From positions 1 through 64,000 of the IMG/VR virus record IMGVR_UViG_3300020154_000003: a stretch of 64,000 nt of DNA; one strand, 5' to 3'. Shown here one piece after another: positions 8,004 to 22,279 of this stretch. How positions within the stretch are numbered: the stretch's first letter is position 1; every line of letters starts with the position of its first letter. Both the position numbers and the translations under genes were made by a program. The notes under the pieces were generated by a model. That model ran no database searches and was not told the DNA's origin. It saw nothing but the letters and a program-made list of their open reading frames with translations.

Positions 8004-8014
8004 GTCAGAAATAA

Positions 8015-8191: not shown

Positions 8192-8212
8192 AGTAATATT
8201 TTCTCATAAATA

Positions 8213-8818
8213 CTATGAAAATAAGAAAACAACAATACTACGCTTTAATAAGCCAAATTCGGGGAATAATTTATAGAACTTTTGGTATTCTGTAGAATCG
8301 TCCAGTAGGTGATTTTTGGACTTAGATACCATTACATTAATGATGTCATCCACATGATGACCTAAATATTCGTAGATAGATAATTTTAACCCACATATAA
8401 CATGGCCCTTGCGATAATATAGTATATCCTTTTTATAAACATACAAATCACCATTGGGTTTGAAGAAGTTATGAAGTTGTTCAACTGTGTATAGGTTGTG
8501 GAAAAATGGGTCGATATTAACATATTTGTATTTAGATATATAATACTCAGGAATCCTTTTTACAAAGTTTTCCAGTCCCTGCGAGTACTGAACAATATCC
8601 TCTTCCGGGGAAAACTCCCAATACCTTTGATTGACCATATTTTTGGTCAAAATATCAGCTTCGCCACCAGTATTTGTACTTTTGAAGTAATTCCAACCGA
8701 CAATTAAGGTGGGTAACTGGTTTCTAACCTCAGAAACGTCCTTGTAGTAATTAAGGAACTCAACTTCTTTATGATTTATCAGCCGTTCGGGAGAAACAAC
8801 GTTACCTATCTTGATCAT
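8213..8818 (-). CDS. Hypothetical protein, last gene of the glycosylation operon
   Basis: 201-aa ORF whose start overlaps the wecB stop codon by 1 nt. Confidence 0.6.
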   Translation of the reverse strand: MIKIGNVVSPERLINHKEVEFLNYYKDVSEVRNQLPTLIVGWNYFKSTNTGGEADILTKNMVNQRYWEFSPEEDIVQYSQGLENFVKRIPEYYISKYKYVNIDPFFHNLYTVEQLHNFFKPNGDLYVYKKDILYYRKGHVICGLKLSIYEYLGHHVDDIINVMVSKSKNHLLDDSTEYQKFYKLFPEFGLLKRSIVVFLFS

Positions 8819-9837
8819 TAAACTATTTTTGTCTTTTCCAGTATTTTAACAATTTTTTTAGCGGAAAATCCATCGCCAAAGGGACAAATACTATCCTTGA
8901 CCTCAAAATCGATCATCGTTTCCTTAATTAAGGATTCAAGATGTGCTGGTGAGGGGCATAAGGTACTGGTTTGACCCAAAGCTTCTGGCCTTTCCGTCTC
9001 TTTTCGACAAACTATGGTCTTTTTCTGAAAAAATGACGATTCTTCCTGCAATCCACCACTATCAGTCACGACAAATTTACATTTTACTAGAATATTAAGC
9101 AAATCTTCATGATTTAATGGTGGAATCACCTTCACATGAGTCAAAATATCACGATGCTTCATGACATTAGGGTTTGGATGGATCGGTAGAATAAATTCAT
9201 AGTCAGGATATGCTGCTGCGATCCTATTTATCTGTTCAAACCACACATCAATTGAATCGTGGTTCTCGCGCCTATGTAACGTAACCAGTACTTTGTTTGT
9301 ATATTCACACAAATCTTTAAAAGGTAATAAATTATCAAGCACCGTATTCCCCACAATCCATTTTTCACCTCCCACCTGCTCAGATACTAAATTCAGTTCA
9401 TTACTAGGCGTTGGACACAAATGAATGGAGGCTATTTTAGAAATCATCAACCTGTTTGCTTCCTCAGGGAAAGGGTTTTGAAGATCGAATGTGCGCAATC
9501 CAGCTTCAAGGTGAATTACTTTAATTCCGTTGTGAAACGCAGCCAAGGCGACACCTAAAGCAGATGTGGTATCCCCTTGTACCATCACATATTTGTAATC
9601 AAAGTCCTGAAACAATTTAGATGCAGCCACCATTACCGATGACAACACGTTAGTCAAGCGATCAACACGATGAGTTGGTGGTATGTGTAATGAAACATCC
9701 GCACGAACAACATTCAATAAATCCCTATGTTGACCAGTAAATAATGTCTCAAACAAAAATTTTTGATTTACTAATTCATCAATAACAGGCTTAACTTTCA
9801 ACCACTCCGGTCTAGTCCCAAACGCAATGAGAAGCAT
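8818..9837 (-). CDS. wecB: UDP-N-acetylglucosamine 2-epimerase (non-hydrolysing)
   Basis: GTRPE, TGQH, VQGDT, HLEAGLRT, PEEANR, TLHRREN, TDSGGLQEE, RPE, PFGDG motifs. Confidence 0.95.
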   Translation of the reverse strand: MLLIAFGTRPEWLKVKPVIDELVNQKFLFETLFTGQHRDLLNVVRADVSLHIPPTHRVDRLTNVLSSVMVAASKLFQDFDYKYVMVQGDTTSALGVALAAFHNGIKVIHLEAGLRTFDLQNPFPEEANRLMISKIASIHLCPTPSNELNLVSEQVGGEKWIVGNTVLDNLLPFKDLCEYTNKVLVTLHRRENHDSIDVWFEQINRIAAAYPDYEFILPIHPNPNVMKHRDILTHVKVIPPLNHEDLLNILVKCKFVVTDSGGLQEESSFFQKKTIVCRKETERPEALGQTSTLCPSPAHLESLIKETMIDFEVKDSICPFGDGFSAKKIVKILEKTKIV

Positions 9838-10319
9838 TATTCTTTTATAAATTTACCTTTATATGTTTCAATTATGTCACTACATATCCCCACTAAGGAT
9901 TCATTGAGAAAAGCATTATGTAGCTTATCGAAAGTCACGTTCTCGCTTTCAGGCAACACTGCAATACTATTTGCTACCGCACGATTGCCCGGATAAACCC
10001 AAACAAATCCTTTTGAAGTTATTGTATACCAATCCGTATTGTGCCAAAAATAATGGAATCGCTCACCGTTATTAACTAAGTAATTCAATGCCTCCTTATT
10101 TTTTGCGTGAATCCAGAAATGTGAATTAGATAAAAATTCAGGTGAGACTTCATATGTCGGTTCATCATGTCCTAAATAAGGCTTGTCCTTATGCAACCAC
10201 AAATCAATTTCAACATCATAACCTGCCATCAAAGCAGTTACGATATAGTTTGGGGAATTCTCCCAACCACTTTTCCCATTAATATTCCCGCGATGTGAAA
10301 TATATTTAAATTGTTCCAT
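9837..10319 (-). CDS. GDPD/PLC-like phosphodiesterase-fold protein
   Basis: SHRGN, EN(S)P, GYDVEIDLW, LGHD and WIHAKN motifs; short (160 aa). Confidence 0.7.
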   Translation of the reverse strand: MEQFKYISHRGNINGKSGWENSPNYIVTALMAGYDVEIDLWLHKDKPYLGHDEPTYEVSPEFLSNSHFWIHAKNKEALNYLVNNGERFHYFWHNTDWYTITSKGFVWVYPGNRAVANSIAVLPESENVTFDKLHNAFLNESLVGICSDIIETYKGKFIKE

Positions 10320-10650
10320 CTACCACATATTTATCATCTTGTACAGATGGGAGTTTAATCGCAACAATAGCTGCATCAGTTATTGCGCGGAACTCGATTA
10401 TTTCATTTTGAAAAACTTCAATAATATCACCCTCTCCAAAGATTTTATCATTCATTTGCACCTGTCCTGACACCACCACAGTATATTCTTTCGCTATCTT
10501 ATGATAATGTGCGTTATCGACATCGCCCTTCTGATAGTATTTTACAGCAATCTCAAAATCCTTACTATTAACCAGCACCGGATTAAAATTTCCCATGAAC
10601 CAGCCATTAGTAAAGTTTTTCAATTGATGTTTTAGCATATTATTTAACAA
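10306..10650 (-). CDS. Cupin-fold protein (sugar isomerase/epimerase-like)
   Basis: HYHKIAKEYTVVVSG cupin motif 1, followed by GDIIEV. Confidence 0.75.
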   Translation of the reverse strand: MLNNMLKHQLKNFTNGWFMGNFNPVLVNSKDFEIAVKYYQKGDVDNAHYHKIAKEYTVVVSGQVQMNDKIFGEGDIIEVFQNEIIEFRAITDAAIVAIKLPSVQDDKYVVDGTI

Positions 10651-10659
10651 ATATACAAT

Positions 10660-11403
10660 TTAATCTAATATTTTAGAGTGTTTTAAAAAATAGTCAAGGT
10701 CTTCGGGTACACCAATACCCCACATCTTTTTAACATCATAAACCGATATTTTATGATTTTCGGGAATAGCTTCATTATATACTGGTGCCACGTAAAATTC
10801 TCCGTTTACACGAATGTTTTTGTTGATCATTTGCTCCGCATATTTGACATAATCTCTTCCCTCTCTCCAAACATATATTCCAACCGTTGCAACTGTCGAT
10901 ATAGGTTCTTTTTCAGCAACCCTTTTTACAAGACCTTCATCGTTCAACTCCACAAAACTCCATTTAGGATGGGTCGATTCAAACGTTAGTACTACACCAC
11001 TTAATTTATTTGACTCGTCAAACTGTATTTCTAAGTAATTAAGGAACTTCGTTGAGTTATATTGAATAATTTGATCTGAATTGGCAATGATTAATGGTCG
11101 ATCATTATTAATATACTCTTTCGCAAGTAATGTTGTACAAGCTGCACCCTCAGTCAGTGAATCTACTACAACTATTGAGCATCCCGGCTTAATTAAATTC
11201 AAAACCATATCCAACTTATATTTTTCATGATGTTCTTTTTGAACTATAAAAACATAGTCACCATTAATAGATATGTTTTCAACAACAACCTGAATCATTG
11301 GCTTATTATTGATCGGTATTAATGGTTTGGGAAAAGTATAACCAGCATTGGCGAACCGTGAGCCTGCGCCAGCCATTGGGATGAGAATAATAGGTTTTTT
11401 CAT
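10660..11403 (-). CDS. Sugar-phosphate nucleotidyltransferase (GT2_BcE-like / NTP_transferase)
   Basis: IPMAGAGSRF, PKPLI, EGAACT, NSDQ, AEKEPIS, GEFYVAP, GVPEDL. Confidence 0.85.
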   Translation of the reverse strand: MKKPIILIPMAGAGSRFANAGYTFPKPLIPINNKPMIQVVVENISINGDYVFIVQKEHHEKYKLDMVLNLIKPGCSIVVVDSLTEGAACTTLLAKEYINNDRPLIIANSDQIIQYNSTKFLNYLEIQFDESNKLSGVVLTFESTHPKWSFVELNDEGLVKRVAEKEPISTVATVGIYVWREGRDYVKYAEQMINKNIRVNGEFYVAPVYNEAIPENHKISVYDVKKMWGIGVPEDLDYFLKHSKILD

Positions 11404-12044
11404 CTATAAAATCCCTTTGATGCTTGAATGTAATCCAAACGGAATTTTATTGGTTCGTAACGAATTTCACTACTATCTTTTACCTCATACAAATATGCTC
11501 CTGATTTTTTGGCAGCATCGATACCATATTTTGAATCTTCAAAAATCATTGTTTCAAGTGCATCACAACGACCTATTTCCATAGCCAATTCAAACATCTC
11601 AGGATCAGGTTTAGGGTGAATTACATTTTCATTTGAAAGATAATGATCTACATAATCCATCAAACCAGTCTTTTCAAGTGCTGCGCGAATAGTTGCATGT
11701 ATTGAATTTGATGCCACCATTATTTGATACCCATCTTCTTTCAATTTGCGTAATGCTTCGTTAACGTGTTCATCAGGTAATAGAGTGTCCTCAATTACTT
11801 GTGCTGTAATTGCTTGCTTACGATCCCAAACACGTTCATGTTCACTGAGTGGCAACCCTCTTTCCTCTGTAAGCATGTATAATTTTTGTTTTGTTGGAAG
11901 TCCATCATATCTACTTTCATGGTCTTCACGGTTGATGATGAATTTAGGATCAACTTCACCCAATGCCCGATTAAGTGCTTCATAGTGTACGTCCTTCAAT
12001 TCAATCAACGTACCATCCATATCAAATATTAATAATTTTATCAT
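11400..12044 (-). CDS. HAD-family phosphatase (beta-PGM/Gph-like)
   Basis: FDMDGTL (motif I), VASNS (II), KPDP (III), FEDS..G (IV). Confidence 0.9.
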   Translation of the reverse strand: MIKLLIFDMDGTLIELKDVHYEALNRALGEVDPKFIINREDHESRYDGLPTKQKLYMLTEERGLPLSEHERVWDRKQAITAQVIEDTLLPDEHVNEALRKLKEDGYQIMVASNSIHATIRAALEKTGLMDYVDHYLSNENVIHPKPDPEMFELAMEIGRCDALETMIFEDSKYGIDAAKKSGAYLYEVKDSSEIRYEPIKFRLDYIQASKGFYR

Positions 12045-12058
12045 TTGGTTAAATTTAA

Positions 12059-12784
12059 CTAACTATTAGTCCCTCTTGTATAAGGGTTAATTCCATATTT
12101 TTTAAACAATTCCTTCAACTCATTAGAATATTCATCAGTATTCCACTTACCCTTTACTACGGCAGTTGCTATATAGGGATATATCGAACTATCAAAATGA
12201 CTAGTACCCTTTCGTGAAGAGCCACCATCATCAATATAGTAACCGAAGATTTTTCTTTCTATACAAACTCGTTTTGCGTCAACCTCAAACTCCCATACGT
12301 TCCTACCTTTAGAATTATCATATACTTCTCTAAGTTTTTCAAAATTCCAGATTGTCGGTTGTATTGCGAACACACAATCAAACTTATTGGTGATTATTTT
12401 TAATTCAGGATAAGTCGCATCAGATAAGCCAAACGTAATCCCTCCTTTAATCAGTTTAACAAAATACTTATCCTCAATATTTGCTTTTAAATATTCAGTA
12501 AATACTTTAAGCTTATCATGGTTTGGAGTATCATACAAAAACATATCTTCATGTTGGAAAATACAATAATCGACAGTATTAATCTTTTTCAATGCTGATG
12601 ACATCCTTTCTCTATATGTGAGTTTATCATCATATAAAATAACTTCATAATTGATGGGAATACCAGCGACCCATTTATCTACTATGATGTAATGTTTATC
12701 CTCAGGGAAATACTTATTCATCTGACCAAAATATAATGGCCAAATGTCTTTGTAATCGCTATGAGTATAAACTATGAAATTCAT
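12059..12784 (-). CDS. Putative GT-A fold glycosyltransferase
   Basis: Cluster context; YCIFQHEDMFL acidic metal-binding-type motif; QPTIW and WEFE motifs. Confidence 0.55.
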   Translation of the reverse strand: MNFIVYTHSDYKDIWPLYFGQMNKYFPEDKHYIIVDKWVAGIPINYEVILYDDKLTYRERMSSALKKINTVDYCIFQHEDMFLYDTPNHDKLKVFTEYLKANIEDKYFVKLIKGGITFGLSDATYPELKIITNKFDCVFAIQPTIWNFEKLREVYDNSKGRNVWEFEVDAKRVCIERKIFGYYIDDGGSSRKGTSHFDSSIYPYIATAVVKGKWNTDEYSNELKELFKKYGINPYTRGTNS

Positions 12785-13440
12785 TGTTTTAATGTGTCTT
12801 TGGCTTTTCTACCCCAACCAAGATGTCTCACATAACCTTGATCAAATATAGCTGCACGGAAACCTAATTCACCATACTTGACACTAACCCAAGGCTCTCC
12901 ATCAAATTGTTCTATTGGTTTAATTAATTCATAATCACGTAATCTTCTCAAACCCGGATTGAAGCTAAACCCATTCCACACACTGAAGTAATGCATTGCA
13001 AGCAGTCTAAATTTCTTACCTCCAATGCTACTGGCATAGTATTGCGGATCAAGAGGATGTCCATTAGTATCATTGACTTCCCTCAACCATACTTGGATAA
13101 TTTTTTTATTAGACTCCAGAACTTCTAAACTGTCCTCAATGAACCCACTTCGATAAAATTCCCAATCTTCTTCACAATGAAAGATGTATTCAGTATCGAC
13201 ATGAGCATATGCCAAGTCAATAGATTTCATTTGACCTAGATTTTTAGGATTGTCAATCCACACAAAATTATGATCTTTATACTTCTCTTTTAAATGATCG
13301 TTAATATTTGGTTTACCTGAATCTTCAATTACCACATACTTTTTAATTGGATATGTGTTAAACTTGAAAAAGGAATCAAGAGTTTTTTCTAACAAGTCAG
13401 GTCTATTGCACGATGTCAAAACGAATGTTACTTCTTTCAT
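12781..13440 (-). CDS. Glycosyltransferase family 2
   Basis: TSCNRPDLLEKTL, IEDSG, NLGQ, YIFHCEEDWEF. Confidence 0.8.
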   Translation of the reverse strand: MKEVTFVLTSCNRPDLLEKTLDSFFKFNTYPIKKYVVIEDSGKPNINDHLKEKYKDHNFVWIDNPKNLGQMKSIDLAYAHVDTEYIFHCEEDWEFYRSGFIEDSLEVLESNKKIIQVWLREVNDTNGHPLDPQYYASSIGGKKFRLLAMHYFSVWNGFSFNPGLRRLRDYELIKPIEQFDGEPWVSVKYGELGFRAAIFDQGYVRHLGWGRKAKDTLKQ

Positions 13441-14180
13441 TAAATAACTGGTTTACTTTTAGTTAAATACTCATTGAAGGCTTTTGTTACTTCCTGATCT
13501 TCATAGAAATAGTGTCTACCAATACCAACTTTTCTATTTGCATCAGGTATTCGAGATTTCGATCTATGAACTTTAAATAGTAGATACTCTAAAGACAATC
13601 CTTTATAGTGTAATAATTTTAATCCACCATAAGCAGTAGCTTTCACATTCCCCTTGGGATCAGAATAGTGACATCCCATACCATAATCGATTTCATCTAA
13701 ATCGTCAGGGGAGAATATTACTTGCTTATCCATCATTTCAAATTTGCATCCGTTTTTTACTCGCTCAGTTAGCTGCAAATCTGGTTTAAATTCAGGAAAC
13801 ACGTTGCTATACATATTATATCCTTCTGGTTTGAAGATTGTTATTCCTGCCTTCTTTTTTTCATCCAAAAATTGATGAATATTCTCGTGGTATAAGAATT
13901 CATCCAAATCACAAACAATCACATAATCCACGTTCTGATTTTTAGAATCTTTCCATGCATTATTTTTTATTTTTGTGAACACAAGATCATCTTGTTTGTT
14001 ATTCGACTCATATTGTCTGATTTCATGATCTACACCAGAATTTTTGATGATCTCAATACTACTATCAGTGCTAAAATTGTCGTAGAAAAAGAACTTTGAT
14101 ACGAAAGTTCTGTAGTGATTTATAAAAAACGGAAGTAAATCTTCCTCGTTATAAAGAATTGTATATAGATGTATTTTCAT
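13440..14180 (-). CDS. Glycosyltransferase, GT2/GT92-like
   Basis: YNEEDLLPFFINHY, YDNFSTD, IVCDLDEFL (DxD), LLHY. Confidence 0.8.
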   Translation of the reverse strand: MKIHLYTILYNEEDLLPFFINHYRTFVSKFFFYDNFSTDSSIEIIKNSGVDHEIRQYESNNKQDDLVFTKIKNNAWKDSKNQNVDYVIVCDLDEFLYHENIHQFLDEKKKAGITIFKPEGYNMYSNVFPEFKPDLQLTERVKNGCKFEMMDKQVIFSPDDLDEIDYGMGCHYSDPKGNVKATAYGGLKLLHYKGLSLEYLLFKVHRSKSRIPDANRKVGIGRHYFYEDQEVTKAFNEYLTKSKPVI

Positions 14181-14986
14181 TAAACAAATTTTGATTTTTC
14201 ATATAATCCAACTCTCATAAAAAACCATTTATGATATAGATGATTGTTAATTATCTGCCAAGTAGGATATTTTATTAAGTTGGTTGTTTTTGTTGGTTGA
14301 AAAAATTCATTACTAAATTCATCGTTTGCATTACTGTCGGGCCAACCATTAATTAATGCCTTGTGGTATTCACTCCCAATTTTGAAGTCATGCATAGCAT
14401 GTTCTTGCATCATGATGAGAATATTCATATTTTTTGAATTAGAATAAAACCATTGATCAGCATACCCTGCATTCAATTGTGCCCACATTGAAGAATAAAT
14501 GTACTGCATATCGGCCTCAGGCATAAAATTCATTAAAGAAACATTATATCCTCTGTGCAAACCACTTCTATGTCCCAAATCAAAACGAGCAGTGACAACC
14601 ACATCATATTCAAAATCATATTCCAATTCGTGAGTATATTTAAATATGATTGACGCACCTCTACTGGTATAAAAGCTTAATGACGATTGGATAGTACAAT
14701 CTTTGAAGATTGTTTCTGATCTGTTGAAATCTTTATCAATATCACTTTGAGACAACCCCCTTTTTTTAGCTAAAGCTTCGAAGTCAGCTTGTTTATCGAA
14801 AACAGCAAATTTTGGATTATAAAGACCTCTAATTTTATCTTCATTCTCCAAATCCCATGAATGTATAAAGACATCAACGTTAGGATATTTAAGTATATTA
14901 TCCTTAATGTAATTATACCCCTTCATTCCAGCATTAGAATCTCCCTTATTGTTGAAGTACCCGTACAAACAAAGTGCTATTTTCAT
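14180..14986 (-). CDS. Uncharacterised glycosyltransferase-like protein
   Basis: IALCLYG, DVFIHSWD, YDVVVTARFDL and DQWFY motifs, of the kind seen in phage and giant-virus glyco-cluster proteins; cluster context. Confidence 0.5.
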   Translation of the reverse strand: MKIALCLYGYFNNKGDSNAGMKGYNYIKDNILKYPNVDVFIHSWDLENEDKIRGLYNPKFAVFDKQADFEALAKKRGLSQSDIDKDFNRSETIFKDCTIQSSLSFYTSRGASIIFKYTHELEYDFEYDVVVTARFDLGHRSGLHRGYNVSLMNFMPEADMQYIYSSMWAQLNAGYADQWFYSNSKNMNILIMMQEHAMHDFKIGSEYHKALINGWPDSNANDEFSNEFFQPTKTTNLIKYPTWQIINNHLYHKWFFMRVGLYEKSKFV

Positions 14987-16047: not shown

Positions 16048-16048
16048 T

Positions 16049-16816
16049 CTACCATATGCAAGTTTTTTTAAGTGATTCCCCGCCAGTTAAGTAACCTCTT
16101 AAACCCTTCATACCCATATATGGATTTAATGTTGTACCAATATCAATATATGTATTATCTGGTGCTATCTTAAAAAGTTCATACTGCAATACATTGCTCA
16201 ATGATGATGCTGAAAATAGGAAAATATGGTTTTTAATCTCATTATCCATCACCCATTTTTTCATCGTCTCAATGAGATCATAGTTATTTATTATGCAGTT
16301 TGCTCCTACTCTAAAATCTTTTTTTACTTTGAAAGGAAGTGTATCTAGGGTTGCATTTTCATTGACCACATACACAATACCGTCATTTTCTCTTTTCTTT
16401 AAAAGAGGAACAATGTGTTCCATGAAGAGAGGATAATTTGAATTAACCCACAAATTCGACCACGTTAGATTTTGATGATCGCCACCATACCAATCAACCA
16501 TTTCCTGAAAATCGCTATATCCAACGCAGCATCGACAACTCAGACCTACAAAATAATTATCAGCCTTGTGCTGGTATGATTGCATTAAATGATCGCTAAA
16601 AAATTTATGCTGTTTAGGGTGAAAGTGTTTATGATCTTCAGGAGCATATCTGCCCGGACTCTTTGAGTTACCTATCACAAAATGATCATCAGCTAACTTC
16701 AATTCTTGTTCTTGAAGTATTCTAAGTTCACCATCGCTAAAGCGTAGGAATGCGAAATTTTCTTTATTTGCAATCTTACCATGAAGCAACCAAAAATGTT
16801 TTTTAAAATCTTTCAT
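16049..16816 (-). CDS. GT-D fold (DUF1792-like) glycosyltransferase
   Basis: FAFLRFSDGE N-terminal signature and IDIG motif near the C-terminus. Confidence 0.6.
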   Translation of the reverse strand: MKDFKKHFWLLHGKIANKENFAFLRFSDGELRILQEQELKLADDHFVIGNSKSPGRYAPEDHKHFHPKQHKFFSDHLMQSYQHKADNYFVGLSCRCCVGYSDFQEMVDWYGGDHQNLTWSNLWVNSNYPLFMEHIVPLLKKRENDGIVYVVNENATLDTLPFKVKKDFRVGANCIINNYDLIETMKKWVMDNEIKNHIFLFSASSLSNVLQYELFKIAPDNTYIDIGTTLNPYMGMKGLRGYLTGGESLKKTCIW

Positions 16817-16817
16817 A

Positions 16818-17552
16818 TTAATGGTTTTTTATTATCCAACCATTATTACAACATTCCCGAACAATATGATCTCGAACATTATTATGATTGTTATTATGTA
16901 GCCAGCTTGCAGATGCATCATTACCGTGCTTAAATCCAAAAGCAGGATCACAACTCCATAAAGTAGTGTCATCTTCAGGATGAGGTGGAACCCATGTTTT
17001 TATTTTTCCATATTTTTGAAGTAAATATGAAAACATAATGTCCTCACCATTTTCCCAAGAAACAGGTTTTTCATACCACATGTATTTACTCCACGTTGAT
17101 TTCCAAAACCAAGCATGTCCTACCAGATCAACATCAGTAGGTATAGTACGTCTCACGCCATTCCACCCTATCTTTTGATTAGGGCCATACGAAGTAGTGT
17201 TAGGTAACACCACACCACTACCTCCAAGTAAACCATCGACTTGATCCATTGTCTCAAGGCAGTTTTTAAACCAATTTACTCCGGGCAGAACGTCATCGTC
17301 AAAGAGCGCAACATATTCAGTTTGCACCAACATTGCTGCAGCAAATCTGCCGTGGAATTTTGTATTTTGGTTACAAACAAAGATTCTATGACTAGAATTT
17401 TTAGGTGCAGCCTGCTTGGCAGTTCCTTTATTGTACCAAACCCATATATTTTCATCCCGTACTGGAACTGATTGATTCTTTATTGCCTCAATCTGAGCCT
17501 CAAGAGTATGTGCCCTGTTGTAAACATTCAAAATGACGGTTATCTCGCTCAC
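16818..17552 (-). CDS. Glycosyltransferase family 2
   Basis: ILNVYNR, EYVALFDDDVLPG, GEDIMFS. Confidence 0.8.
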   Translation of the reverse strand: MSEITVILNVYNRAHTLEAQIEAIKNQSVPVRDENIWVWYNKGTAKQAAPKNSSHRIFVCNQNTKFHGRFAAAMLVQTEYVALFDDDVLPGVNWFKNCLETMDQVDGLLGGSGVVLPNTTSYGPNQKIGWNGVRRTIPTDVDLVGHAWFWKSTWSKYMWYEKPVSWENGEDIMFSYLLQKYGKIKTWVPPHPEDDTTLWSCDPAFGFKHGNDASASWLHNNNHNNVRDHIVRECCNNGWIIKNH

Positions 17553-17565
17553 TACTACCTATCCT

Positions 17566-18219
17566 TTATATAAGATTATGCTTTCTCATCACTATCATCG
17601 GTGCTTCATTTTCATTATTTGCCAATGAAGTAATTCCTTCATCCAGATAATATGCATAAAACATATTATTCTCTCCACCGAGTGCTATTCCTTCATGACC
17701 GTTTTTAACCATGCTCAAATACATATCCCAATCTTGAAGTCTTTTCAATGATTCGTCAAATCTTGGAAATGCTTCACGCTTCATTAATGACATTGTTGAG
17801 ATGTAATTACCTCTTTTCAATTGAGTGCTATTGAACGCCAACGTAGGTATTTTAAAATTACCTCTCATTGGATGTGTTTGAGGATGAAGAACTATTCCAT
17901 GATAACCAGTATAGGCAAATGATTTATCGGGATTATCTTGTAATAAATTGAATAGATTTTCTAAATAATCTTTACGCAAGACAATATCATCATCACAAAA
18001 GAATATATATGGTTGTGTTGATAGATCAAAACCATCATTTCTTTTCTTAGGCGCACCACCTATATTGTCATTTACGATAATTTCTGCAGGTCTATTTGCC
18101 TCAAGCATGGGCAACACAATATTTTCAAAAAAATCCCTTCTCTTGGAACCTAATGGAACAATAAACGATACTGGTAAACAGTCATCAAAATCCTCAAATA
18201 ATTTATCAACCGTAATCAT
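17566..18219 (-). CDS. Glycosyltransferase family 2
   Basis: SFIVP, KRNDG, FFCDDDIVL, QDWDMYL. Confidence 0.85.
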   Translation of the reverse strand: MITVDKLFEDFDDCLPVSFIVPLGSKRRDFFENIVLPMLEANRPAEIIVNDNIGGAPKKRNDGFDLSTQPYIFFCDDDIVLRKDYLENLFNLLQDNPDKSFAYTGYHGIVLHPQTHPMRGNFKIPTLAFNSTQLKRGNYISTMSLMKREAFPRFDESLKRLQDWDMYLSMVKNGHEGIALGGENNMFYAYYLDEGITSLANNENEAPMIVMRKHNLI

Positions 18220-18950
18220 AGTATTATTTTTGCAGGCAAGTCATCTTTATATAATTCAACAAATAACTGTCTATTCTCTTCCCACTCTGAATTGGTCTCA
18301 CCAACTGATTTATGCATCACACTAATACGATCAACAACACCAATATTGCAGCCTTCCAAATAATTCCTAAAACAGAAAGAGATGTCGTATAAATGAAATC
18401 CCTTAAACCTTTCGTCAAACATCTCTGCGACAGTTCTACCATTAACAGCCATAAAAAGACCATCGATGGTAACAACTTCTTTAACCCCTGAGATTTTTTC
18501 TGAATATATGCTTTCCCATTCACGTAACCCGTTGGTGTGCCATACACGACCAAACATTTTACTGTGATTCATTTCCTTTCCATCAGGAGTTAGCCACCAA
18601 CATCCATGTGAATTAAGTTCAGTCGTACCAGCAATACCTATGATGTCGAAATATTGATATTTAAACAATCCAAGCAGTATGCGACCCCAATCTTTAGTTT
18701 TGAAAACAATATCATTGTGACAAAACACAATAATTCCATCGCCTCTACCAATTTCTTTGATATGGTTCCAACCTAAATTATAAGCTTCAGTCAAAGAGTA
18801 TTGACGTTTATTTACAATACAATGTACATAAACATCGACCTGACCGACTGTTTCTTTAACATGTTTAATGAATTCATTATTTTCATCATCGGAAAGATGA
18901 CTACTGAATATTATTGATAATTTACTTCTCATTGTTTGCCTTAAAAGCAA
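18216..18950 (-). CDS. Glycosyltransferase-like family 2 protein
   Basis: SLTEAYNLG, FCHNDI, DGLFMAV, FDERFKGFHLYDISF. Confidence 0.8.
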   Translation of the reverse strand: MLLRQTMRSKLSIIFSSHLSDDENNEFIKHVKETVGQVDVYVHCIVNKRQYSLTEAYNLGWNHIKEIGRGDGIIVFCHNDIVFKTKDWGRILLGLFKYQYFDIIGIAGTTELNSHGCWWLTPDGKEMNHSKMFGRVWHTNGLREWESIYSEKISGVKEVVTIDGLFMAVNGRTVAEMFDERFKGFHLYDISFCFRNYLEGCNIGVVDRISVMHKSVGETNSEWEENRQLFVELYKDDLPAKIIL

Positions 18951-18965
18951 ACATAGTTAAACTAT

Positions 18966-19277
18966 TTAAGATTCCATATATTTTCTTAAACTATTTTCAA
19001 AAATCATTTTCGCTTTCTCTAAAGGGAAAGGAATGCGAATAATAGTGCCATCAGGAATATCAAATTCACTGATATACTGCGGATTAGCATACATAATTAA
19101 AAAGTCATACATCGGACTACTGTAATAATCTGATGAAATAATATCCATTCTACTAAATCCTTCTCTCCATTCTTCATATTTATCTGAGGAACTAACTGGA
19201 ATATTTACAAAAGGAGGCATATCAATACTTCCATCGTTATTTTTTAGTATTTGGTATCTATCGTAATCTGCTTGCAT
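18966..19277 (-). CDS. Baseplate wedge protein, T4 gp53/LysM-like
   Basis: RMDIISSDYYSSPMYDFLIMYAN...IPDGTIIRIP matches the gp53/LysM-type pattern. Confidence 0.65.
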   Translation of the reverse strand: MQADYDRYQILKNNDGSIDMPPFVNIPVSSSDKYEEWREGFSRMDIISSDYYSSPMYDFLIMYANPQYISEFDIPDGTIIRIPFPLEKAKMIFENSLRKYMES

Positions 19278-19282
19278 CTTAA

Positions 19283-22198
19283 TTAAGGTTTAATGGCTTC
19301 AGTGTTAGCATTTGACTGACCACCTGTTTGAGATGAATCAGTTATTTTTGATCCATTATTGGCTTCTATTTGTGCGGATTCAGCGATTCTAGCAGTCTTG
19401 TAAACACCAACAGGATAATATGTCGAATTTGCGTAGTAGTTGAAACTTTCAGCATTCTGTAGAACATCAATGGCAGACTTCAACGATTGTCCACCAATTA
19501 CACGCATAGTAATGCTTATGTCAGCAATCATAAACTGCATACCCATGCCTTCAGGATTCATGTCCCAAGGAGCGTCAGTATAATCAAAATCAATACTATC
19601 AATGATCACCTTCGTGTGAAAGAAATCACCAATTCTCAACACGCATACTGGTGGTCTTCCGAATACTGAATTACGAGCAGCAGGAATACCCTGACTTTCG
19701 GTCGAATCCAATACTGTTGCGTTACCCTGACGTGTACACTGTTGTAAGAATGTTAATCTTCTATGAAAATCTTCGGGTGTCTGCGAATGAAATACTGGTG
19801 ACAGTGTGCGTTTTTCTGCAGCTTCGAATCCAGTATATTCTTTATCGTTAACATTTTTCAAAACAAACAACCCATCGTTGTTTTGGAAGTTTTCAGCTTC
19901 AGCAATTAATCTCTTATTTGCTTCAATCTGTTCAAGAATTTTATTTCTATCGTTTTTCTGTTGTTCAGTTAATTCAACCTCCTTATATCTAACCGCTCCG
20001 TTTCTAACCAGTACTACCTTTGCATTTCTCTCTGGTTTAACATCCGATGCATACGCAAATTCTGCTTGCGCACCTCTGTCTGAACCATTGGTTGAACCTG
20101 ATGCAACTTTAATTACTTTCACACCAGCTTCTTCCAGCGTTTTACCATGTTCAGTTTTAAACTTTGTTTGAATATATTCATACAACGCCTCAACCCTTCT
20201 TCTTGATAAATCTAAATTATATTGATACTGTTTTGTTTTATCCACATATAGTTTCGATGCAGAACCAACAAAATTTAATGTTACTAAGTCCAATTCACCA
20301 GTATTTGGGTTAAGTACTGATTGAACGAAGTCAGTCACTGTAGAATCGAAACCAACATTTAATCCATCATCGTTGGGTTCGTTACCATCGTCAGTACCGT
20401 TTTCATACGAGCCATCAGGATCAACAACATCCACGTCATTAGGGAAATAATACGTAACATATGTTCCAGATTTAATTACTGGTGTCTGTTGAATTTTATT
20501 TGGTGTAATGGTCTGTAATTGTGCCTCAAGCCTAGAATTTTCAACTTTCTTAGCTTCAATGTCAACGTTCTTCAACTCAGAAGCACTTAATCTACCACCG
20601 AAAGCAAAAAATTTAGCAGCCTCATTATGGCTTCTACCTCTAATCTGTGGTGGATAATCGATAATTAATTTAAATCCTAATCTTGCTATACGCTCTGATG
20701 AACTATATGTATATATAGGTTCACCTCTACCGATGAAGGTTGTAGTTTCATGCTTCGCAATCGAACTTTCACTTAATTGGATGCCGTAAGGAGGAAACCA
20801 CATCACTCTCCCCATATTTTCACCTACTTCGCTCAACGGAACTTTTGTTCCGAAGGCATCACCCAAATATCCTTTGCTGTTTAATCTAAATGCAAGGTTT
20901 TCGATACTAAACATCATGTTCCTGTTGTCGATAACATTTTTCTCTTTATCGAAAATTGGATGCATCTTAGGAATCACATATCTATTTATCACCGATTCTT
21001 TAGGCCCATCATAAATGTTGTTACCATTAAATCTGATCGCTTTTTTATAATTGTTGTAAGGGTCGATAATATTTTGCTGTCTTTCAGTACGAACGTTACC
21101 ATCATTGTCTCTTGTAAGTGGCGAACCATTGTACATAGGATTTCCGTCCTTGTCATACCACTTCTTTTTCGTCTGGTCGATAGATGAGTTACCACCTCTG
21201 GCTTGCATCAAGGCTCTGGTATAAGCCAGCATACCCGTTCTAATGCCGAATTTAGAGGCCATCGTATTTGCACCGTCTCTACCCCAAACAACCTGACCAT
21301 TGACGTTATCCACGCCAAAGCCATAGCTATTATCAACAAAGTCAAAATCTTTGTCCTTAGGTTGATTTGGTAAGTTCTGAGCAGTGTTTCCAACGTAGTT
21401 GGTAGTCTTACCCAACCTACTTTTGTGATTTGCACTACCATATTCAAGATTGTTCTGGCCTTCGATACTTTTAAGATCGGGTATTTGATATTCATCAACC
21501 ACCGTCATAGATGCCTCAAACCCGTTAGGGAAATTTTCAGGGTCATCAGTAGGAAATAATACACGCTCATACCATTCACGGCCAGCAGGGATTATTGACA
21601 AACCTTGACCGTTGGTTGTAGATATAAATGCACTATCACTAGGCTTATATAGGTTTTTATTTAAACTTTCATAAAGAAAATTCAACACCCCTTTACCTGT
21701 GTTTCTCACCAACTCGTTACGCATCATTCGGAATTCTTCGTTGGTTCTGGTTGGGCTTAATGGTGAGGTCACTCGTTGATTACCAGCAATTCTTTCAATG
21801 ATATTTTCAACTGTGGTATTATCCTCATCACGAGTAATACGATAATCTACACGTTTTGTAAATAATTTTGTATTTGGATTACCATCAAAAAGATTGTTGA
21901 AATTTATAGATGGTAAACCAGCAGTAAGGGCGTTTTGTGTCACTCTTTGAGCAAATTGCTTACCTAATTGCTCGATTCCGATCTGTGCAATAGGTGTATT
22001 TGGCCCAATCATCCTACCGATAACCGTATTTTTAAGGTCAAAAGACTTGGTTGGGTTGAAAACAGCAGAAATTCCGTTAATAGCCTTAATTAATAACGGG
22101 TTGTCAATCGCATAAGGATCATTTGGAGTGTATAAGTTTCTGGCTACCAAATTTTCCCTTAAATTTTTTAATTCTTGGCTGTCTTTTAATCCGGGCAT
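19283..22198 (-). CDS. Large baseplate / tube-initiator-like virion protein with an OmpA-like domain
   Basis: Tube-like segments (FIGRGEPIYTY; GRPPVCVLRIGDFFHTKVIIDSIDFDY) flank an OmpA_C-like stretch; late motif at 22215-22222. Confidence 0.6.
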   Translation of the reverse strand: MPGLKDSQELKNLRENLVARNLYTPNDPYAIDNPLLIKAINGISAVFNPTKSFDLKNTVIGRMIGPNTPIAQIGIEQLGKQFAQRVTQNALTAGLPSINFNNLFDGNPNTKLFTKRVDYRITRDEDNTTVENIIERIAGNQRVTSPLSPTRTNEEFRMMRNELVRNTGKGVLNFLYESLNKNLYKPSDSAFISTTNGQGLSIIPAGREWYERVLFPTDDPENFPNGFEASMTVVDEYQIPDLKSIEGQNNLEYGSANHKSRLGKTTNYVGNTAQNLPNQPKDKDFDFVDNSYGFGVDNVNGQVVWGRDGANTMASKFGIRTGMLAYTRALMQARGGNSSIDQTKKKWYDKDGNPMYNGSPLTRDNDGNVRTERQQNIIDPYNNYKKAIRFNGNNIYDGPKESVINRYVIPKMHPIFDKEKNVIDNRNMMFSIENLAFRLNSKGYLGDAFGTKVPLSEVGENMGRVMWFPPYGIQLSESSIAKHETTTFIGRGEPIYTYSSSERIARLGFKLIIDYPPQIRGRSHNEAAKFFAFGGRLSASELKNVDIEAKKVENSRLEAQLQTITPNKIQQTPVIKSGTYVTYYFPNDVDVVDPDGSYENGTDDGNEPNDDGLNVGFDSTVTDFVQSVLNPNTGELDLVTLNFVGSASKLYVDKTKQYQYNLDLSRRRVEALYEYIQTKFKTEHGKTLEEAGVKVIKVASGSTNGSDRGAQAEFAYASDVKPERNAKVVLVRNGAVRYKEVELTEQQKNDRNKILEQIEANKRLIAEAENFQNNDGLFVLKNVNDKEYTGFEAAEKRTLSPVFHSQTPEDFHRRLTFLQQCTRQGNATVLDSTESQGIPAARNSVFGRPPVCVLRIGDFFHTKVIIDSIDFDYTDAPWDMNPEGMGMQFMIADISITMRVIGGQSLKSAIDVLQNAESFNYYANSTYYPVGVYKTARIAESAQIEANNGSKITDSSQTGGQSNANTEAIKP

Positions 22199-22214
22199 GT
22201 AGTTTACTTTTCAC

Positions 22215-22222
22215 ATAAATAC
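22215..22222 (-). promoter_or_regulatory. Putative late promoter GTATTTAT heading the baseplate + glycosylation operon
   Basis: 16 nt upstream of the ATG at 22198. Confidence 0.6.
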
Positions 22223-22243
22223 TTGACTTATTTTTTAATAAAA

Positions 22244-22275: not shown

Positions 22276-22279
22276 CGAG

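What the first reader, a model, noticed from the sequence alone, without database searches (positions are those of the whole stretch)
8818..22222. Fifteen-gene glycosylation cluster wired into a late baseplate operon: candidate phage virion-glycosylation system
Seen: from the GTATTTAT at 22215, two baseplate genes run into 15 sugar-related genes on one strand, with gaps of at most 15 nt or overlaps and no terminator hairpin noticed. The set is about eight GT/GT-like genes, a DegT aminotransferase, a GNAT, a HAD phosphatase, a nucleotidyltransferase, a cupin, a GDPD-like protein and WecB. No Wzx/Wzy/Wzz, Kps or ABC export gene and no undecaprenyl-phosphate priming transferase is present, and the enzymes lack evident membrane anchors. 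Established: glycosylated virions are known in giant viruses and some actinophages, where they can shield the particle. Inference: a soluble cytoplasmic pathway made with virion parts that builds a complex glycan on capsid or tail proteins, rather than host serotype conversion.
Basis: partly seen in the sequence, partly recalled or inferred. Interest (0 to 1): 0.82.

Follow-up and report, generated by a model that had tools for sequence, protein, structure and literature searches.

The report
Phage sugar-gene island behind tail genes
An uncultured 366-kb phage carries 15 sugar-building genes that appear to be transcribed together with two tail-tip genes, an arrangement kept across its whole lineage; it probably puts a sugar coat on a phage-made target, perhaps the virus particle, but the target is not shown.

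Summary
From a GTATTTAT motif at 22215-22222 (minus strand), 18 genes run head-to-tail to 8213. They are a 971-aa and a 103-aa protein, 15 sugar-related genes and a 201-aa unknown. Gaps are at most 15 nt, no cluster protein has a membrane segment, and there is no export or priming gene.

The motif behaves like a promoter for structural genes. It precedes the tail sheath, tail tube, prohead protease and a tape-measure-like gene, and never a replication gene in this window.

Nine related jumbo-phage lineages keep the same unit: motif, 971-aa gene, 103-aa gene, glycosyltransferase (GT) island, and, where the fetched DNA reaches that far, the 201-aa gene and a second motif. Four proximal GTs are conserved. 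The distal genes vary like an O-antigen locus.

"Baseplate" rests on synteny, a LysM-like fold signature and an OmpA-like domain. It is plausible but not proven.

The target of the sugars is unresolved. A conserved initiating GT, late-class wiring and soluble enzymes favour a phage-encoded acceptor such as virion protein. Remodelling of host surface glycan, the usual reading of jumbo-cyanophage sugar clusters, is not excluded. DNA glycosylation has no support in the gene neighbourhood.

Verdict: a new variant of a known kind, moderately interesting.

The parts
22215..22222 (-). GTATTTAT promoter-like motif, 16 nt upstream of the ATG of the 971-aa gene
   Evidence: Over-represented in the window (14 against 5.5 expected). 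It lies upstream of the sheath, tube, prohead protease and tape-measure-like genes. It is conserved before the 971-aa homolog in all nine related lineages.
19283..22198 (-). 971-aa putative tail-tip/baseplate protein with an OmpA-like peptidoglycan-binding domain (about residues 565-700)
   Evidence: Family profile against the PDB hits OmpA-like 6u83 (E = 0.002). It follows a tape-measure-like 837-aa gene and a T4_baseplate (gp26-like) gene. There is no Pfam or PHROG hit. The AF2 model is poor (pLDDT 40).
18966..19277 (-). 103-aa LysM-like small tail/baseplate protein
   Evidence: hhalign probability 93-95% to the syntenic small proteins of Flavobacterium phage immuto and Microcystis phage Mel-JY01. 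A weak match falls on the LysM-like region of T4 gp53.
18216..18950 (-). GT2_5 glycosyltransferase, conserved in every lineage (candidate initiating GT)
   Evidence: Pfam PF13712, E = 2.7e-22. Present in 9 of 9 related loci at 44-67% identity. At least 148 orthologs, several on contigs of 290-370 kb.
17566..18219 (-). GT2 glycosyltransferase (core)
   Evidence: Pfam PF00535, E = 7.9e-11. Present in 7 of 9 loci.
16818..17552 (-). GT2 glycosyltransferase (core)
   Evidence: Pfam PF00535, E = 4.9e-8. Present in 8 of 9 loci.
16049..16816 (-). GT-D-fold glycosyltransferase (core), with a DGE (DXE) motif at residues 28-30
   Evidence: Atlas feature score 0.95-0.98 and TM 0.8-0.9 to clusters carrying PF08759/PF22882. 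Weak NCBIfam hit to the SP_1767 family. Present in 8 of 9 loci.
15622..16047 (-). GNAT N-acetyltransferase
   Evidence: Pfam PF00583, E = 6e-6. Fused to the short DegT in L004/L011.
14983..15621 (-). Shortened (212-aa) DegT-family PLP aminotransferase
   Evidence: Pfam PF01041, E = 4e-29. It aligns to PseC 2fn6 residues 32-106 and 176-251 only, and the Lys of SFHIKK is kept. Homologs of similar length (about 210-245 aa) occur in L002 and L006.
14180..14986 (-). 268-aa protein of a virus-rich unannotated family (near DUF7796)
   Evidence: Atlas result. No Pfam or NCBIfam hit.
13440..14180 (-). GT2_4 glycosyltransferase
   Evidence: Pfam PF13704, E = 1.2e-11.
13451..13470 (-). Possible internal promoter variant: GTATTTAA followed by AAAAGTAAAC, 10 nt upstream of the ATG at 13440
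   Evidence: It shares the 10-mer AAAAGTAAAC with the leader of the 971-aa gene. Its function was not tested.
12781..13440 (-). GT2 glycosyltransferase
   Evidence: Pfam PF00535, E = 4.8e-11.
12059..12784 (-). 241-aa protein of a large unannotated family, possibly GT-A-like (HED motif)
   Evidence: 454 homologs, none with a Pfam domain. The family profile finds nothing in the PDB. The DXD-like motif aligns with that of the GT2_4 protein, but not significantly.
11400..12044 (-). HAD hydrolase/mutase of the beta-phosphoglucomutase family
   Evidence: Pfam HAD_2, E = 8.7e-30. TIGR02009, E = 1e-24.
10660..11403 (-). Sugar-1-phosphate nucleotidyltransferase
   Evidence: Pfam PF00483, E = 7.8e-14. 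rmlA_long, E = 3.8e-17, below its cut-off.
10306..10650 (-). 114-aa cupin
   Evidence: Weak Pfam cupin hits. Canonical cupin motif 1 read from the sequence.
9837..10319 (-). 160-aa protein with a GDPD-like N-terminal motif (weak lead)
   Evidence: The only PDB hit is a glycerophosphodiester phosphodiesterase, E = 0.27.
8818..9837 (-). WecB, non-hydrolysing UDP-GlcNAc 2-epimerase (makes UDP-ManNAc)
   Evidence: Pfam PF02350, E = 8e-72. TIGR00236 scores 244 bits, above its cut-off of 210.
8213..8818 (-). 201-aa conserved last gene of the unit, function unknown
   Evidence: 18 homologs, all without annotation. The AF2 model is good (pLDDT 91.5) but has no significant PDB fold match. It is followed directly by the next GTATTTAT in the window and in L006, L007 and L012.
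8206..8213 (-). Next GTATTTAT motif, marking the start of the following unit (58-aa ORF 8015-8191, then the 246-aa gene)
7203..7222 (-). First strong intrinsic-terminator hairpin downstream of the unit

Best explanation
This is a lineage-wide, cytoplasmic glycan-assembly island. It is transcribed from a promoter of the structural-gene class as the 3' part of a tail-tip/baseplate operon.

Proposed mechanism:
- Supply of activated sugars. WecB makes UDP-ManNAc. A HAD mutase, a nucleotidyltransferase and a cupin make an NDP-hexose. The short DegT and the GNAT make an N-acetylated amino sugar.
- Assembly. Soluble GT-A and GT-D transferases then add the sugars one at a time, with no lipid carrier, flippase or polymerase.
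- Core and periphery. A conserved four-GT core (GT2_5, two GT2 and a GT-D) would build an inner oligosaccharide on an acceptor that the phage itself encodes. A variable outer gene set would diversify the distal sugars.
- Acceptor. The most likely acceptor is one or more virion proteins made at the same time.

Shown here: the gene content, the wiring, its conservation and the absence of export genes. Inferred: the timing, the sugar identities and the acceptor.
For: - Tight same-strand packing with no significant terminator.
- GTATTTAT is enriched. It sits before the sheath, tube, prohead protease, tape-measure-like and 971-aa genes, often right after a terminator hairpin, and never before the PhoH, polymerase, ThyA, UvsX or exonuclease genes.
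- The motif is conserved before the 971-aa homolog in nine related lineages, and again directly after the 201-aa homolog in L006, L007 and L012.
- The same synteny holds in 11 fetched loci plus two further 327-338 kb contigs.
- The proximal GTs are present in 7-9 of 9 lineages at 44-70% identity. They are as conserved as, or more conserved than, the 971-aa and 837-aa proteins. The distal genes are lineage-specific: GDP-mannose dehydratase, SDR enzymes, a GT4, FkbM-type methyltransferases and homing endonucleases.
- The minimal form is a two-domain GT alone (L007).
- There are no membrane segments and no export or priming domains.
- A GT-D fold enzyme belongs to the core.
- There is no 5mYOX, C5-MT or hydroxymethylase next to the GTs, which is the rule for DNA-glycan clusters (preprint 10.1101/2023.12.21.572611). 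The window's ThyA-type enzyme passes the thymidylate-synthase cut-off and keeps the uracil-specifying Asn.
- Weak support: contigs from four runs labelled metatranscriptomic bridge the 971/103 and 103/GT2_5 junctions. None covers 22339-22500, upstream of the motif.
Against: - There is no expression, proteomic or glycan data.
- The runs are flagged as probably DNA. Their contigs come from a 90-95% similar strain and have no direction.
- The 971-aa protein has no detectable similarity to T4 gp6, gp7, gp27, gp48 or gp54, and its model is unusable. 'Baseplate' is therefore synteny-based.
- No Ser/Thr-rich or otherwise obvious acceptor region stands out in structural proteins of the window.
- Anchor-less GTs are also normal in lipid-linked O-antigen synthesis.
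- Similar clusters in jumbo cyanophages are read as host-surface modification (PMC7824862, PMC12801897).
- Only 64 kb of the 366-kb genome was examined.
Confidence: 0.42

Rival explanations
1. Host surface-glycan remodelling. The phage GTs and sugar-nucleotide enzymes act on the host's undecaprenyl-linked O-antigen, capsule or glycoprotein precursors at the inner face of the membrane. They rely on the host's priming transferase, flippase and ligase. The altered cell surface blocks superinfection, or stops progeny adsorbing to debris or infected cells.
For: - Published reading of comparable 15-gene, polymorphic sugar/GT clusters in P-SSM2-type jumbo cyanophages (PMC7824862) and of 22 cell-wall-related genes in S-SCSM2R (PMC12801897).
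- WecB and RmlA-like, DegT, GNAT and GT2 enzymes are standard O-antigen/ECA-type enzymes.
- The island varies between relatives as O-antigen loci do.
- O-antigen GTs are normally peripheral proteins without membrane segments (general knowledge).
Against: - There is no priming transferase, flippase, polymerase, ligase or ABC transporter.
- The island sits behind a promoter class that otherwise serves virion genes. That is late for changing a surface before lysis.
- The initiating-side GTs stay conserved across lineages whose structural proteins have diverged to 34% identity. That fits a conserved phage acceptor better than varied host glycans.
- The minimal island is just two GT domains.
Confidence: 0.28
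2. DNA hypermodification. The GTs build an oligosaccharide on a modified base of the phage genome to evade restriction and CRISPR.
For: - Phage GT-A and GT-B enzymes, sometimes paired with a sugar epimerase, install mono- to multi-sugar glycans on 5hmC (10.1101/2023.12.21.572611).
- The enzymes here are soluble and cytoplasmic.
- A ThyA-family enzyme with a roughly 55-aa insertion lies elsewhere in the window.
- The acceptor would be conserved, which would match the conserved proximal GTs.
Against: - No 5mYOX/TET, C5-methyltransferase or hydroxymethylase is adjacent, contrary to the rule in those clusters.
- The ThyA-type enzyme passes the thymidylate-synthase equivalog cut-off and keeps Asn in PYNVAS, so it is not a dCMP hydroxymethylase.
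- DNA-modifying enzymes are usually early or middle genes placed among replication genes. Here the wiring is with tail genes.
- Six or more GTs plus amino-sugar synthesis exceeds the number of GTs per cluster in the DNA-glycan passages I read.
Confidence: 0.1
3. A passenger hot-spot. The site after the 103-aa gene is simply a permissive insertion point where sugar genes and homing endonucleases accumulate. Co-transcription with tail genes would be incidental, and the products would serve unrelated or several ends, such as metabolic takeover of nucleotide-sugar pools or a secreted or storage glycan.
For: - Gene content turns over strongly, and GIY-YIG and LAGLIDADG endonucleases lie inside the islands of relatives.
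- A block of eight genes (14986-9837) is unique to this phage among the fetched loci.
- A possible internal promoter variant lies at 13451-13470.
Against: - The four proximal GTs and WecB are kept at 44-70% identity across the lineage, in fixed order.
- The unit boundaries (motif ... 201-aa gene, motif) are conserved.
- At least 148 GT2_5 orthologs are known.
- This is the pattern of a core function rather than drift.
Confidence: 0.12

Closest known systems
Sugar/GT clusters of jumbo cyanomyoviruses (P-SSM2 15-gene cluster; S-SCSM1, S-SCSM2R), as described in PMC7824862 and PMC12801897
   Same: Both are multi-gene clusters in large T4-related myophages. They combine nucleotide-sugar synthesis (nucleotidyltransferase, cupin isomerase, HAD, epimerases) with several GT families. 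Both are polymorphic between related phages and have no experimentally shown target.
   Different: - Here the island has a fixed place directly behind post-tape-measure tail genes, inside one promoter-to-promoter unit.
- It has a conserved four-GT core that includes a GT-D fold enzyme.
- The core GTs have no tblastn match in 50,697 phage records.
- No PfkB kinase is present.
- SDR dehydratases occur only in relatives.
Virion glycosylation of mycobacteriophages (Freeman et al. 2023, as summarised in PMC12619734; otherwise from my own knowledge)
   Same: Phage-encoded soluble GTs with no export machinery. The proposed cytoplasmic glycosylation of capsid or tail proteins would work like this system.
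   Different: - Those systems have 2-4 genes in actinophages, and the glycans were shown by mass spectrometry on the C-termini of capsid and tail-tube proteins.
- Here there are 15 genes, including sugar-nucleotide synthesis, in a jumbo myophage probably of a diderm host.
- Nothing has been shown on virions.
Glycosylation gene clusters of giant viruses (Mimivirus/Megavirinae fibrils, chlorovirus capsid glycans; from my own knowledge)
   Same: The virus encodes both the sugar-nucleotide enzymes (aminotransferase, N-acetyltransferase, UDP-GlcNAc 2-epimerase) and the GTs. The clusters are clade-specific and variable, and they decorate the particle without host ER/Golgi-type or Wzx/Wzy-type machinery.
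   Different: The host is eukaryotic and the virus realm is different. No homology beyond the shared enzyme superfamilies was tested here.
Cytoplasmic O-glycosylation of serine-rich-repeat adhesins (Fap1/PsrP pathway, with the GT-D enzyme dGT1/DUF1792; from my own knowledge)
   Same: Soluble GTs act sequentially and directly on a protein before export. A GT-D fold enzyme with a DXE motif is present (D28-G29-E30 here).
   Different: No GtfA/GtfB-type GT-B initiating pair, no serine-rich acceptor and no accessory Sec system is present. The GT-D assignment rests on predicted fold and language-model features, not on Pfam.
'Moraphages', freshwater jumbo phages with four core glycosyltransferase orthogroups (PMC12619734)
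   Same: Jumbo, T4-related core genes (gp19, gp25, gp6, sheath, PhoH, prohead protease, sigma-like factor). The tape measure was not recognisable. Four core GT orthogroups were found and hosts were predicted as Bacteroidota. The lineage studied here likewise has four conserved GTs.
   Different: - Membership was not tested, because none of their genomes was available here.
- Their genomes reach 307 kb, while this contig is 366 kb and its source runs are labelled soil metagenome.
- The paper does not describe the island, its position or its promoter, and it leaves the GT function open.
DNA-glycan biosynthetic clusters of phages (Pyle et al., 10.1101/2023.12.21.572611)
   Same: Phage GT-A-type enzymes, sometimes with a partner sugar epimerase, build glycans in the cytoplasm.
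   Different: Those GTs sit beside 5mYOX/C5-MT or hydroxymethylase genes and replication genes. None is found in or next to this island.

Membership tests
Phage virion-glycosylation system (mycobacteriophage type) | Phage-encoded glycosyltransferases without export machinery | tested here: met
   Five Pfam GT2-type enzymes and one GT-D-fold enzyme. No membrane segments and no Wzx/Wzy/ABC or priming domains.
Phage virion-glycosylation system (mycobacteriophage type) | Expression together with virion structural genes | tested here: inconclusive
   The promoter-like motif is shared with the sheath, tube, protease and tape-measure-like genes, and the unit boundaries are conserved. There is no real expression data, and one search is ambiguous.
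Phage virion-glycosylation system (mycobacteriophage type) | Glycans physically attached to capsid or tail proteins | not testable with these tools
   This needs purified particles and mass spectrometry.
Jumbo-cyanophage sugar/LPS-type cluster (P-SSM2-like) | A cluster combining nucleotide-sugar synthesis enzymes with several GT families, polymorphic among relatives | tested here: met
   compared with the description in PMC7824862.
Jumbo-cyanophage sugar/LPS-type cluster (P-SSM2-like) | One to four NAD-dependent epimerase/dehydratase paralogs and PfkB sugar kinases | tested here: not met
   None is found in the window's 15 genes. SDR dehydratases do occur in relatives L002, L005 and L015.
Jumbo-cyanophage sugar/LPS-type cluster (P-SSM2-like) | Sequence relatedness of the GTs to those of cyanophages | tested here: not met
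   tblastn of the GT2_5, the GT2 at 16818-17552 and the GT-D against 50,697 phage records gave no match.
Wzx/Wzy- or ABC-dependent O-antigen/capsule locus | Priming (undecaprenyl-phosphate) transferase | tested here: not met
   No such Pfam or NCBIfam hit and no membrane protein in the unit.
Wzx/Wzy- or ABC-dependent O-antigen/capsule locus | Flippase/polymerase/chain-length regulator, or ABC exporter | tested here: not met
   Same calls. The remaining roughly 300 kb of the genome was not examined.
DNA-glycan hypermodification cluster | GT adjacent to 5mYOX/TET, C5-MT or a pyrimidine hydroxymethylase | tested here: not met
   There are no such domains in 5777-27010. The ThyA-type enzyme at 59814-60986 passes the TIGR03284 cut-off and keeps Asn.
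DNA-glycan hypermodification cluster | Glycosylated bases in virion DNA | not testable with these tools
   This needs nucleoside LC-MS or native long reads.
GT-D (DUF1792) glycosyltransferases | GT-D fold with an N-terminal DXE metal-binding motif | tested here: met
   Atlas TM 0.80-0.86 to clusters carrying PF08759/PF22882 and feature score 0.95-0.98. DGE at residues 28-30. Pfam itself gave no hit, so this is fold-level evidence only.
T4-type baseplate proteins | Detectable homology of the 971-aa protein to gp6, gp7, gp27, gp48 or gp54 | tested here: not met
   hhalign of the family profile against the T4 proteins gave probability below 1%.
T4-type baseplate proteins | Position after the tape measure and hub genes, with a LysM-like small partner | tested here: met
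   The gene order is T4_baseplate (gp26-like), then an 837-aa protein with a hydrophobic segment, then the 971-aa and 103-aa genes. The 103-aa protein matches syntenic small proteins in phages immuto and Mel-JY01.
Moraphage lineage (PMC12619734) | Clustering with the 25 published genomes on marker-gene trees or AAI | not tested
Only the shared descriptive features are noted.

The most novel reading that the evidence does not exclude
A widespread lineage of uncultured jumbo phages carries a 'virion serotype' locus. A conserved four-glycosyltransferase core, transcribed with tail-tip genes, plants an oligosaccharide on a particle protein. A fast-turning-over outer gene set (amino sugars, methylations, extra GTs) diversifies that oligosaccharide between strains, just as O-antigen loci diversify bacteria. 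The coat would shield or disguise the particle, or tune its adhesion.
Probability: 0.33. Interest if true: 0.8.

Novelty: new variant of a known kind. Interest (0 to 1): 0.55.

Why it matters
Large sugar-gene clusters in big phages have been known for twenty years. They are routinely read as host-surface modification, without any test.

This lineage offers an unusually clean test case:
- The island has fixed borders.
- Its promoter class is shared with virion genes.
- It has a conserved inner set of transferases and a variable outer set.
- In some relatives it is reduced to a minimal two-domain form.

If the acceptor is a virion protein, complex and strain-variable particle glycosylation would extend from actinophages and giant viruses to environmental jumbo phages of Gram-negative hosts. 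That would bear on phage-host recognition, particle stability and immune or defence evasion.

If the acceptor is the host surface, the late-class wiring would need explaining.

In both cases the four core enzymes and the 971-aa and 103-aa proteins are defined, clonable candidates.

Tried and rejected
- Nucleotide search of 8000-23000 against 50,697 phage records gave no match. Protein searches of the 971-aa protein, the GT2_5, a core GT2 and the GT-D against the same records also gave none.
- Pfam, PHROGs, NCBIfam and PDB sequence searches of the 971-, 103-, 201-, 241-, 268- and 160-aa proteins gave nothing significant. The only results were an OmpA-like domain (971 aa) and a weak GDPD hit (160 aa).
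- AF2 of the 971-aa protein with a 7-sequence alignment gave pLDDT 40. That is too poor for a fold search, so none was run.
- AF2 of the 201-aa protein was good (pLDDT 91.5). Foldseek found no PDB fold; the best match was a DEDD-exonuclease-like protein at E = 0.05. In BFVD it matched only an uncharacterised myovirus protein.
- hhalign of the 971-aa family against T4 gp6, gp7, gp27, gp48 and gp54 found nothing.
- T4's late motif TATAAATA is not enriched (8 against 8.8 expected). The sigma-70-type promoter scan was below expectation (76 against 84).
- A search for Ser/Thr-rich acceptor-like segments in the window's structural proteins found nothing striking. The Pro/Ala-rich linker of the 246-aa protein (7263-8003) is not conserved in composition among relatives, so I dropped it as a candidate acceptor.
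- I considered whether the short DegT is a frameshifted gene continued in the next ORF, and rejected it. The next ORF belongs to a family of its own, and short DegT homologs recur in relatives.
- The WecB context in 'Microcystis phage MaAM05' looks like bacterial sequence and was uninformative.
- Rfam found nothing in the window. The conserved 330-nt non-coding stretch upstream of the motif does not fold better than shuffles (z = -1.1).
- No gene interrupted by an in-frame stop was found in the unit. I read nothing through a stop.

Full report
**What the window is.** The 64-kb window is part of IMGVR_UViG_3300020154_000003, a 366-kb viral contig.
- It encodes a T4-related contractile tail: sheath at 38823-41546, gp19-like tube at 37716-38204, and a gp26-like 'T4_baseplate' protein at 26060-27010.
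- It also encodes a prohead protease, PhoH, a sigma-region-2-like protein, a ThyA-type enzyme, and a UvsX-like recombinase with an exonuclease.
- There are no tRNAs in the window.
- Nothing in 50,697 deposited phage genomes is close at the DNA level. The best protein relatives of the sheath are Microcystis phage Mel-JY01 and an uncultured 484-kb phage, at about 32% identity.
- The DNA runs that hold it are labelled soil metagenome.

**The observation.** On the minus strand an uninterrupted file of genes runs from 22198 to 8213. Junctions are -14 to +15 nt.

The enzyme calls are mostly right:
- Five GT2-type glycosyltransferases.
- A GNAT.
- A DegT aminotransferase.
- A HAD enzyme of the beta-phosphoglucomutase family.
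- A sugar-1-phosphate nucleotidyltransferase.
- A small cupin with a canonical metal-binding motif.
- A WecB that passes the curated cut-off for the non-hydrolysing UDP-GlcNAc 2-epimerase.

The 255-aa 'unknown' (16049-16816) has the GT-D fold and a DGE motif at residues 28-30. That makes six verified GTs. The 268-aa and 241-aa proteins belong to large, virus-rich, unannotated families, and I could not show that they are GTs. The 'GDPD-like' label for the 160-aa protein rests on an E = 0.27 hit.

No protein of the unit has a membrane-spanning segment, and no export, polymerase or priming domain was found. Terminator-like sites are no more frequent than in shuffled sequence, and those inside the unit are weak and intragenic. 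The first convincing hairpin is at 7222-7203.

**The promoter-like motif.** GTATTTAT occurs 14 times against 5.5 expected (0 of 100 shuffles).
- Ten copies lie within 60 nt upstream of a same-strand start codon, and two more lie within 125 nt.
- Two copies directly follow terminator hairpins.
- The genes served are the sheath, tube, prohead protease, the 837-aa tape-measure-like gene, the 971-aa gene and several large unknowns next to them.
- None precedes PhoH, the polymerase-region genes, ThyA, UvsX or the exonuclease.
- T4's own late motif is not enriched.

By analogy with T4, where a minimal sigma factor reads a single -10-like octamer, I read GTATTTAT as the promoter of the structural, probably late, class. 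This is an inference from association, not from expression data.

No exact copy lies between 8214 and 22214. The next copy (8206-8213) overlaps the stop codon of the 201-aa gene and opens a new unit: a 58-aa ORF, a 246-aa gene and then the terminator. A variant, GTATTTAA followed by AAAAGTAAAC, lies 10 nt before the ATG at 13440. It shares that 10-mer with the 971-aa leader and may be an internal promoter.

**Relatives.** Eleven further viral contigs encode a homolog of the 971-aa protein at 34-63% identity (46% over the partial copy in L012), and some of them are near-duplicates. Two more long contigs (327 and 338 kb) were reached through the GT2_5 protein.

All keep this order: gp26-like protein, an ~835-aa protein, the ~1000-aa protein, the ~103-aa protein, GT2_5, and then further sugar genes. 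Where the fetched DNA reaches far enough (L006, L007, L012), the 201-aa gene comes next, followed by the homologs of 7263-8003; in the L007 group this continues through 5777-7159, 4371-5642, UvsX and the exonuclease.

GTATTTAT precedes the ~1000-aa gene in every lineage. It recurs immediately after the 201-aa homolog in L006, L007 and L012. The transcription-unit borders are therefore conserved even where protein identity has fallen to about a third.

Inside the borders the content varies.
- GT2_5 is present in 9 of 9 lineages compared. The next three GTs, including the GT-D, are present in 7-8 of 9 at 32-70% identity. WecB is present wherever the locus reaches that far.
- The rest turns over: GDP-mannose 4,6-dehydratase, SDR enzymes, a GT4, extra GT2s, FkbM-type methyltransferases, and GIY-YIG and LAGLIDADG endonucleases.
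- In the L007 group the island shrinks to one 498-aa protein with GT2_5 and GT2 domains.
- The eight genes from 14986 to 9837 are unique to this phage among the fetched loci.
- The GT2_5 family has at least 148 members, several on contigs of 290-370 kb.

**Are the first two genes baseplate genes?** Probably tail-tip or baseplate, but this is not proven.
- The 837-aa upstream protein has the single strong hydrophobic segment typical of tape measures. It sits where Flavobacterium phage immuto has its annotated tape measure.
- In immuto and in Mel-JY01 the tape-measure region is followed by a large protein and then a ~100-aa protein. The 103-aa family matches both small proteins (hhalign 93-95%) over a LysM-like 'tail protein X' type motif, and it matches weakly the equivalent part of T4 gp53.
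- The 971-aa family carries an OmpA-like peptidoglycan-binding domain (E = 0.002).
- It shows no detectable similarity to T4 gp6, gp7, gp27, gp48 or gp54. Its predicted structure is unusable.

**What the enzymes would make (inference from family knowledge).**
- WecB gives UDP-ManNAc.
- The HAD beta-phosphoglucomutase-type enzyme, the nucleotidyltransferase and the cupin resemble a split mutase/pyrophosphorylase/isomerase route to an NDP-hexose.
- The DegT and GNAT pair would give an N-acetylated amino sugar. The two are fused in L004/L011. In L002 the short DegT sits next to a GDP-mannose dehydratase, which would suit a perosamine-type route.
- The DegT is only 212 aa. It aligns to residues 32-106 and 176-251 of H. 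pylori PseC and keeps the Schiff-base lysine, but it lacks about 70 internal residues and the C-terminal domain. Its recurrence at 38-60% identity argues that it is functional in some way.

**Which acceptor?** The data cannot decide this, but they give a ranking.

For a phage-encoded acceptor:
- The transferases nearest the tail genes are at least as conserved as the structural proteins, while the distal ones vary. This is the pattern expected when a conserved acceptor carries a diversifying outer glycan.
- The wiring is with virion genes.
- There are no lipid-carrier or export functions.
- A GT-D enzyme belongs to the core. To my knowledge, the characterised members of that fold extend protein-linked O-glycans in the cytoplasm.

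Against DNA as that acceptor:
- Published DNA-glycan clusters sit beside 5mYOX/C5-MT or hydroxymethylase genes, and none is present here.
- The ThyA-type enzyme scores as a thymidylate synthase and keeps the uracil-specifying Asn.

For the host surface:
- This is the standing interpretation of the 15-gene P-SSM2-type clusters and of the 22 cell-wall-related genes of S-SCSM2R.
- Anchor-less GTs are normal in O-antigen synthesis.

Four runs labelled metatranscriptomic contain contigs 90-95% like the stretch. These contigs bridge the 971/103 and 103/GT2_5 junctions and leave 22339-22500 uncovered. However, the runs are flagged as probably DNA, and contigs do not prove single transcripts. I give this little weight.

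**Relation to the literature.** A 2025 paper describes 'moraphages': freshwater jumbo phages with T4-like core genes, an unrecognisable tape measure, a sigma-like factor, Bacteroidota hosts and four core glycosyltransferase orthogroups. It leaves their role open between DNA, serotype and virion (PMC12619734). The lineage studied here may be the same or a sister group, but I could not test that. That paper does not describe the island, its borders or its promoter.

**Verdict.** It belongs to the known kind 'sugar/GT clusters of large phages', but as a distinct variant:
- It has fixed borders inside a tail-gene transcription unit.
- It has a conserved four-GT core including a GT-D.
- It has a hypervariable periphery.

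Virion glycosylation is the best single reading (about 0.4). It is followed by host-surface remodelling (about 0.3), an incidental insertion hot-spot (about 0.1) and DNA modification (about 0.1).

Noticed in passing
window 14983-15621 (-); L004:18673-19725; L006:17099-17758: A 'mini' DegT-family aminotransferase of 212 aa. It keeps the PLP-lysine motif (SFHIKK) but lacks about 70 internal residues and the whole C-terminal domain relative to PseC (2fn6). It is conserved at 38-60% identity in relatives and is fused to a GNAT in L004/L011.
   Followed up: partly
window 22225-22560 (between the RNase H gene and the GTATTTAT motif); L002:8480-8890: A non-coding stretch of about 330 nt upstream of the operon promoter shares several conserved blocks with L002 (for example GGACTCCCCTA, TTAGGAGTGGGT, TGGTGTTTACCC) but not with L003. 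It has no Rfam hit, and its folding is no better than shuffles (z = -1.1).
   Followed up: partly
window 22588-23046 (+): An RNase H gene (Pfam E = 6e-29) lies on the opposite strand between the tape-measure-like gene and the 971-aa gene. No homolog occupies this position in any fetched relative, so it looks like a lineage-specific insertion.
   Followed up: partly
window 13451-13470 (-): GTATTTAA followed by AAAAGTAAAC lies inside the island, 10 nt before the ATG of the GT2 gene 12781-13440. The same 10-mer follows the GTATTTAT of the 971-aa gene. It may be an internal promoter, or a footprint of how the unique middle block was acquired.
   Followed up: partly
window 59814-60986 (+): A ThyA-type thymidylate synthase of 390 aa with an insertion of about 55 residues between the two conserved halves. 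It passes the TIGR03284 cut-off and keeps the catalytic Cys (ACH) and Asn (PYNVAS).
   Followed up: partly
window 30535-31362 (+) and 31400-32173 (+): A further GT2 glycosyltransferase lies outside the island, in a plus-strand block without the GTATTTAT motif. Next to it is a 257-aa protein with weak sigma-70 region 2 similarity, a candidate for the factor that reads GTATTTAT.
   Followed up: no
window 7263-8003 (-) and 8015-8191 (-): The unit after the island encodes a 58-aa ORF and a 246-aa protein. The 246-aa protein has a Pro/Ala/Thr-rich low-complexity linker of about 80 residues followed by a coiled-coil-like segment. The linker is present in relatives but differs in composition.
   Followed up: partly
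L004:14238-15368; L016:12180-13070: Homing-endonuclease genes (GIY-YIG and LAGLIDADG) sit inside the sugar islands of relatives. This suggests how cassettes may move in and out.
   Followed up: no
window 8213-8818 (-): The conserved 201-aa last gene of the unit folds confidently (pLDDT 91.5) into an alpha/beta domain with no significant match in the PDB. Its faint best matches are DEDD-type exonuclease domains.
   Followed up: yes
window 16800-22500: Four 2025 runs labelled metatranscriptomic (soil) hold short contigs of a 90-95% similar strain. They cover the 971-aa, 103-aa and GT2_5 genes, and several contigs end at 22175-22194, just inside the ATG at 22198. This would fit transcript 5' ends, but the runs are flagged as probably DNA.
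   Followed up: partly
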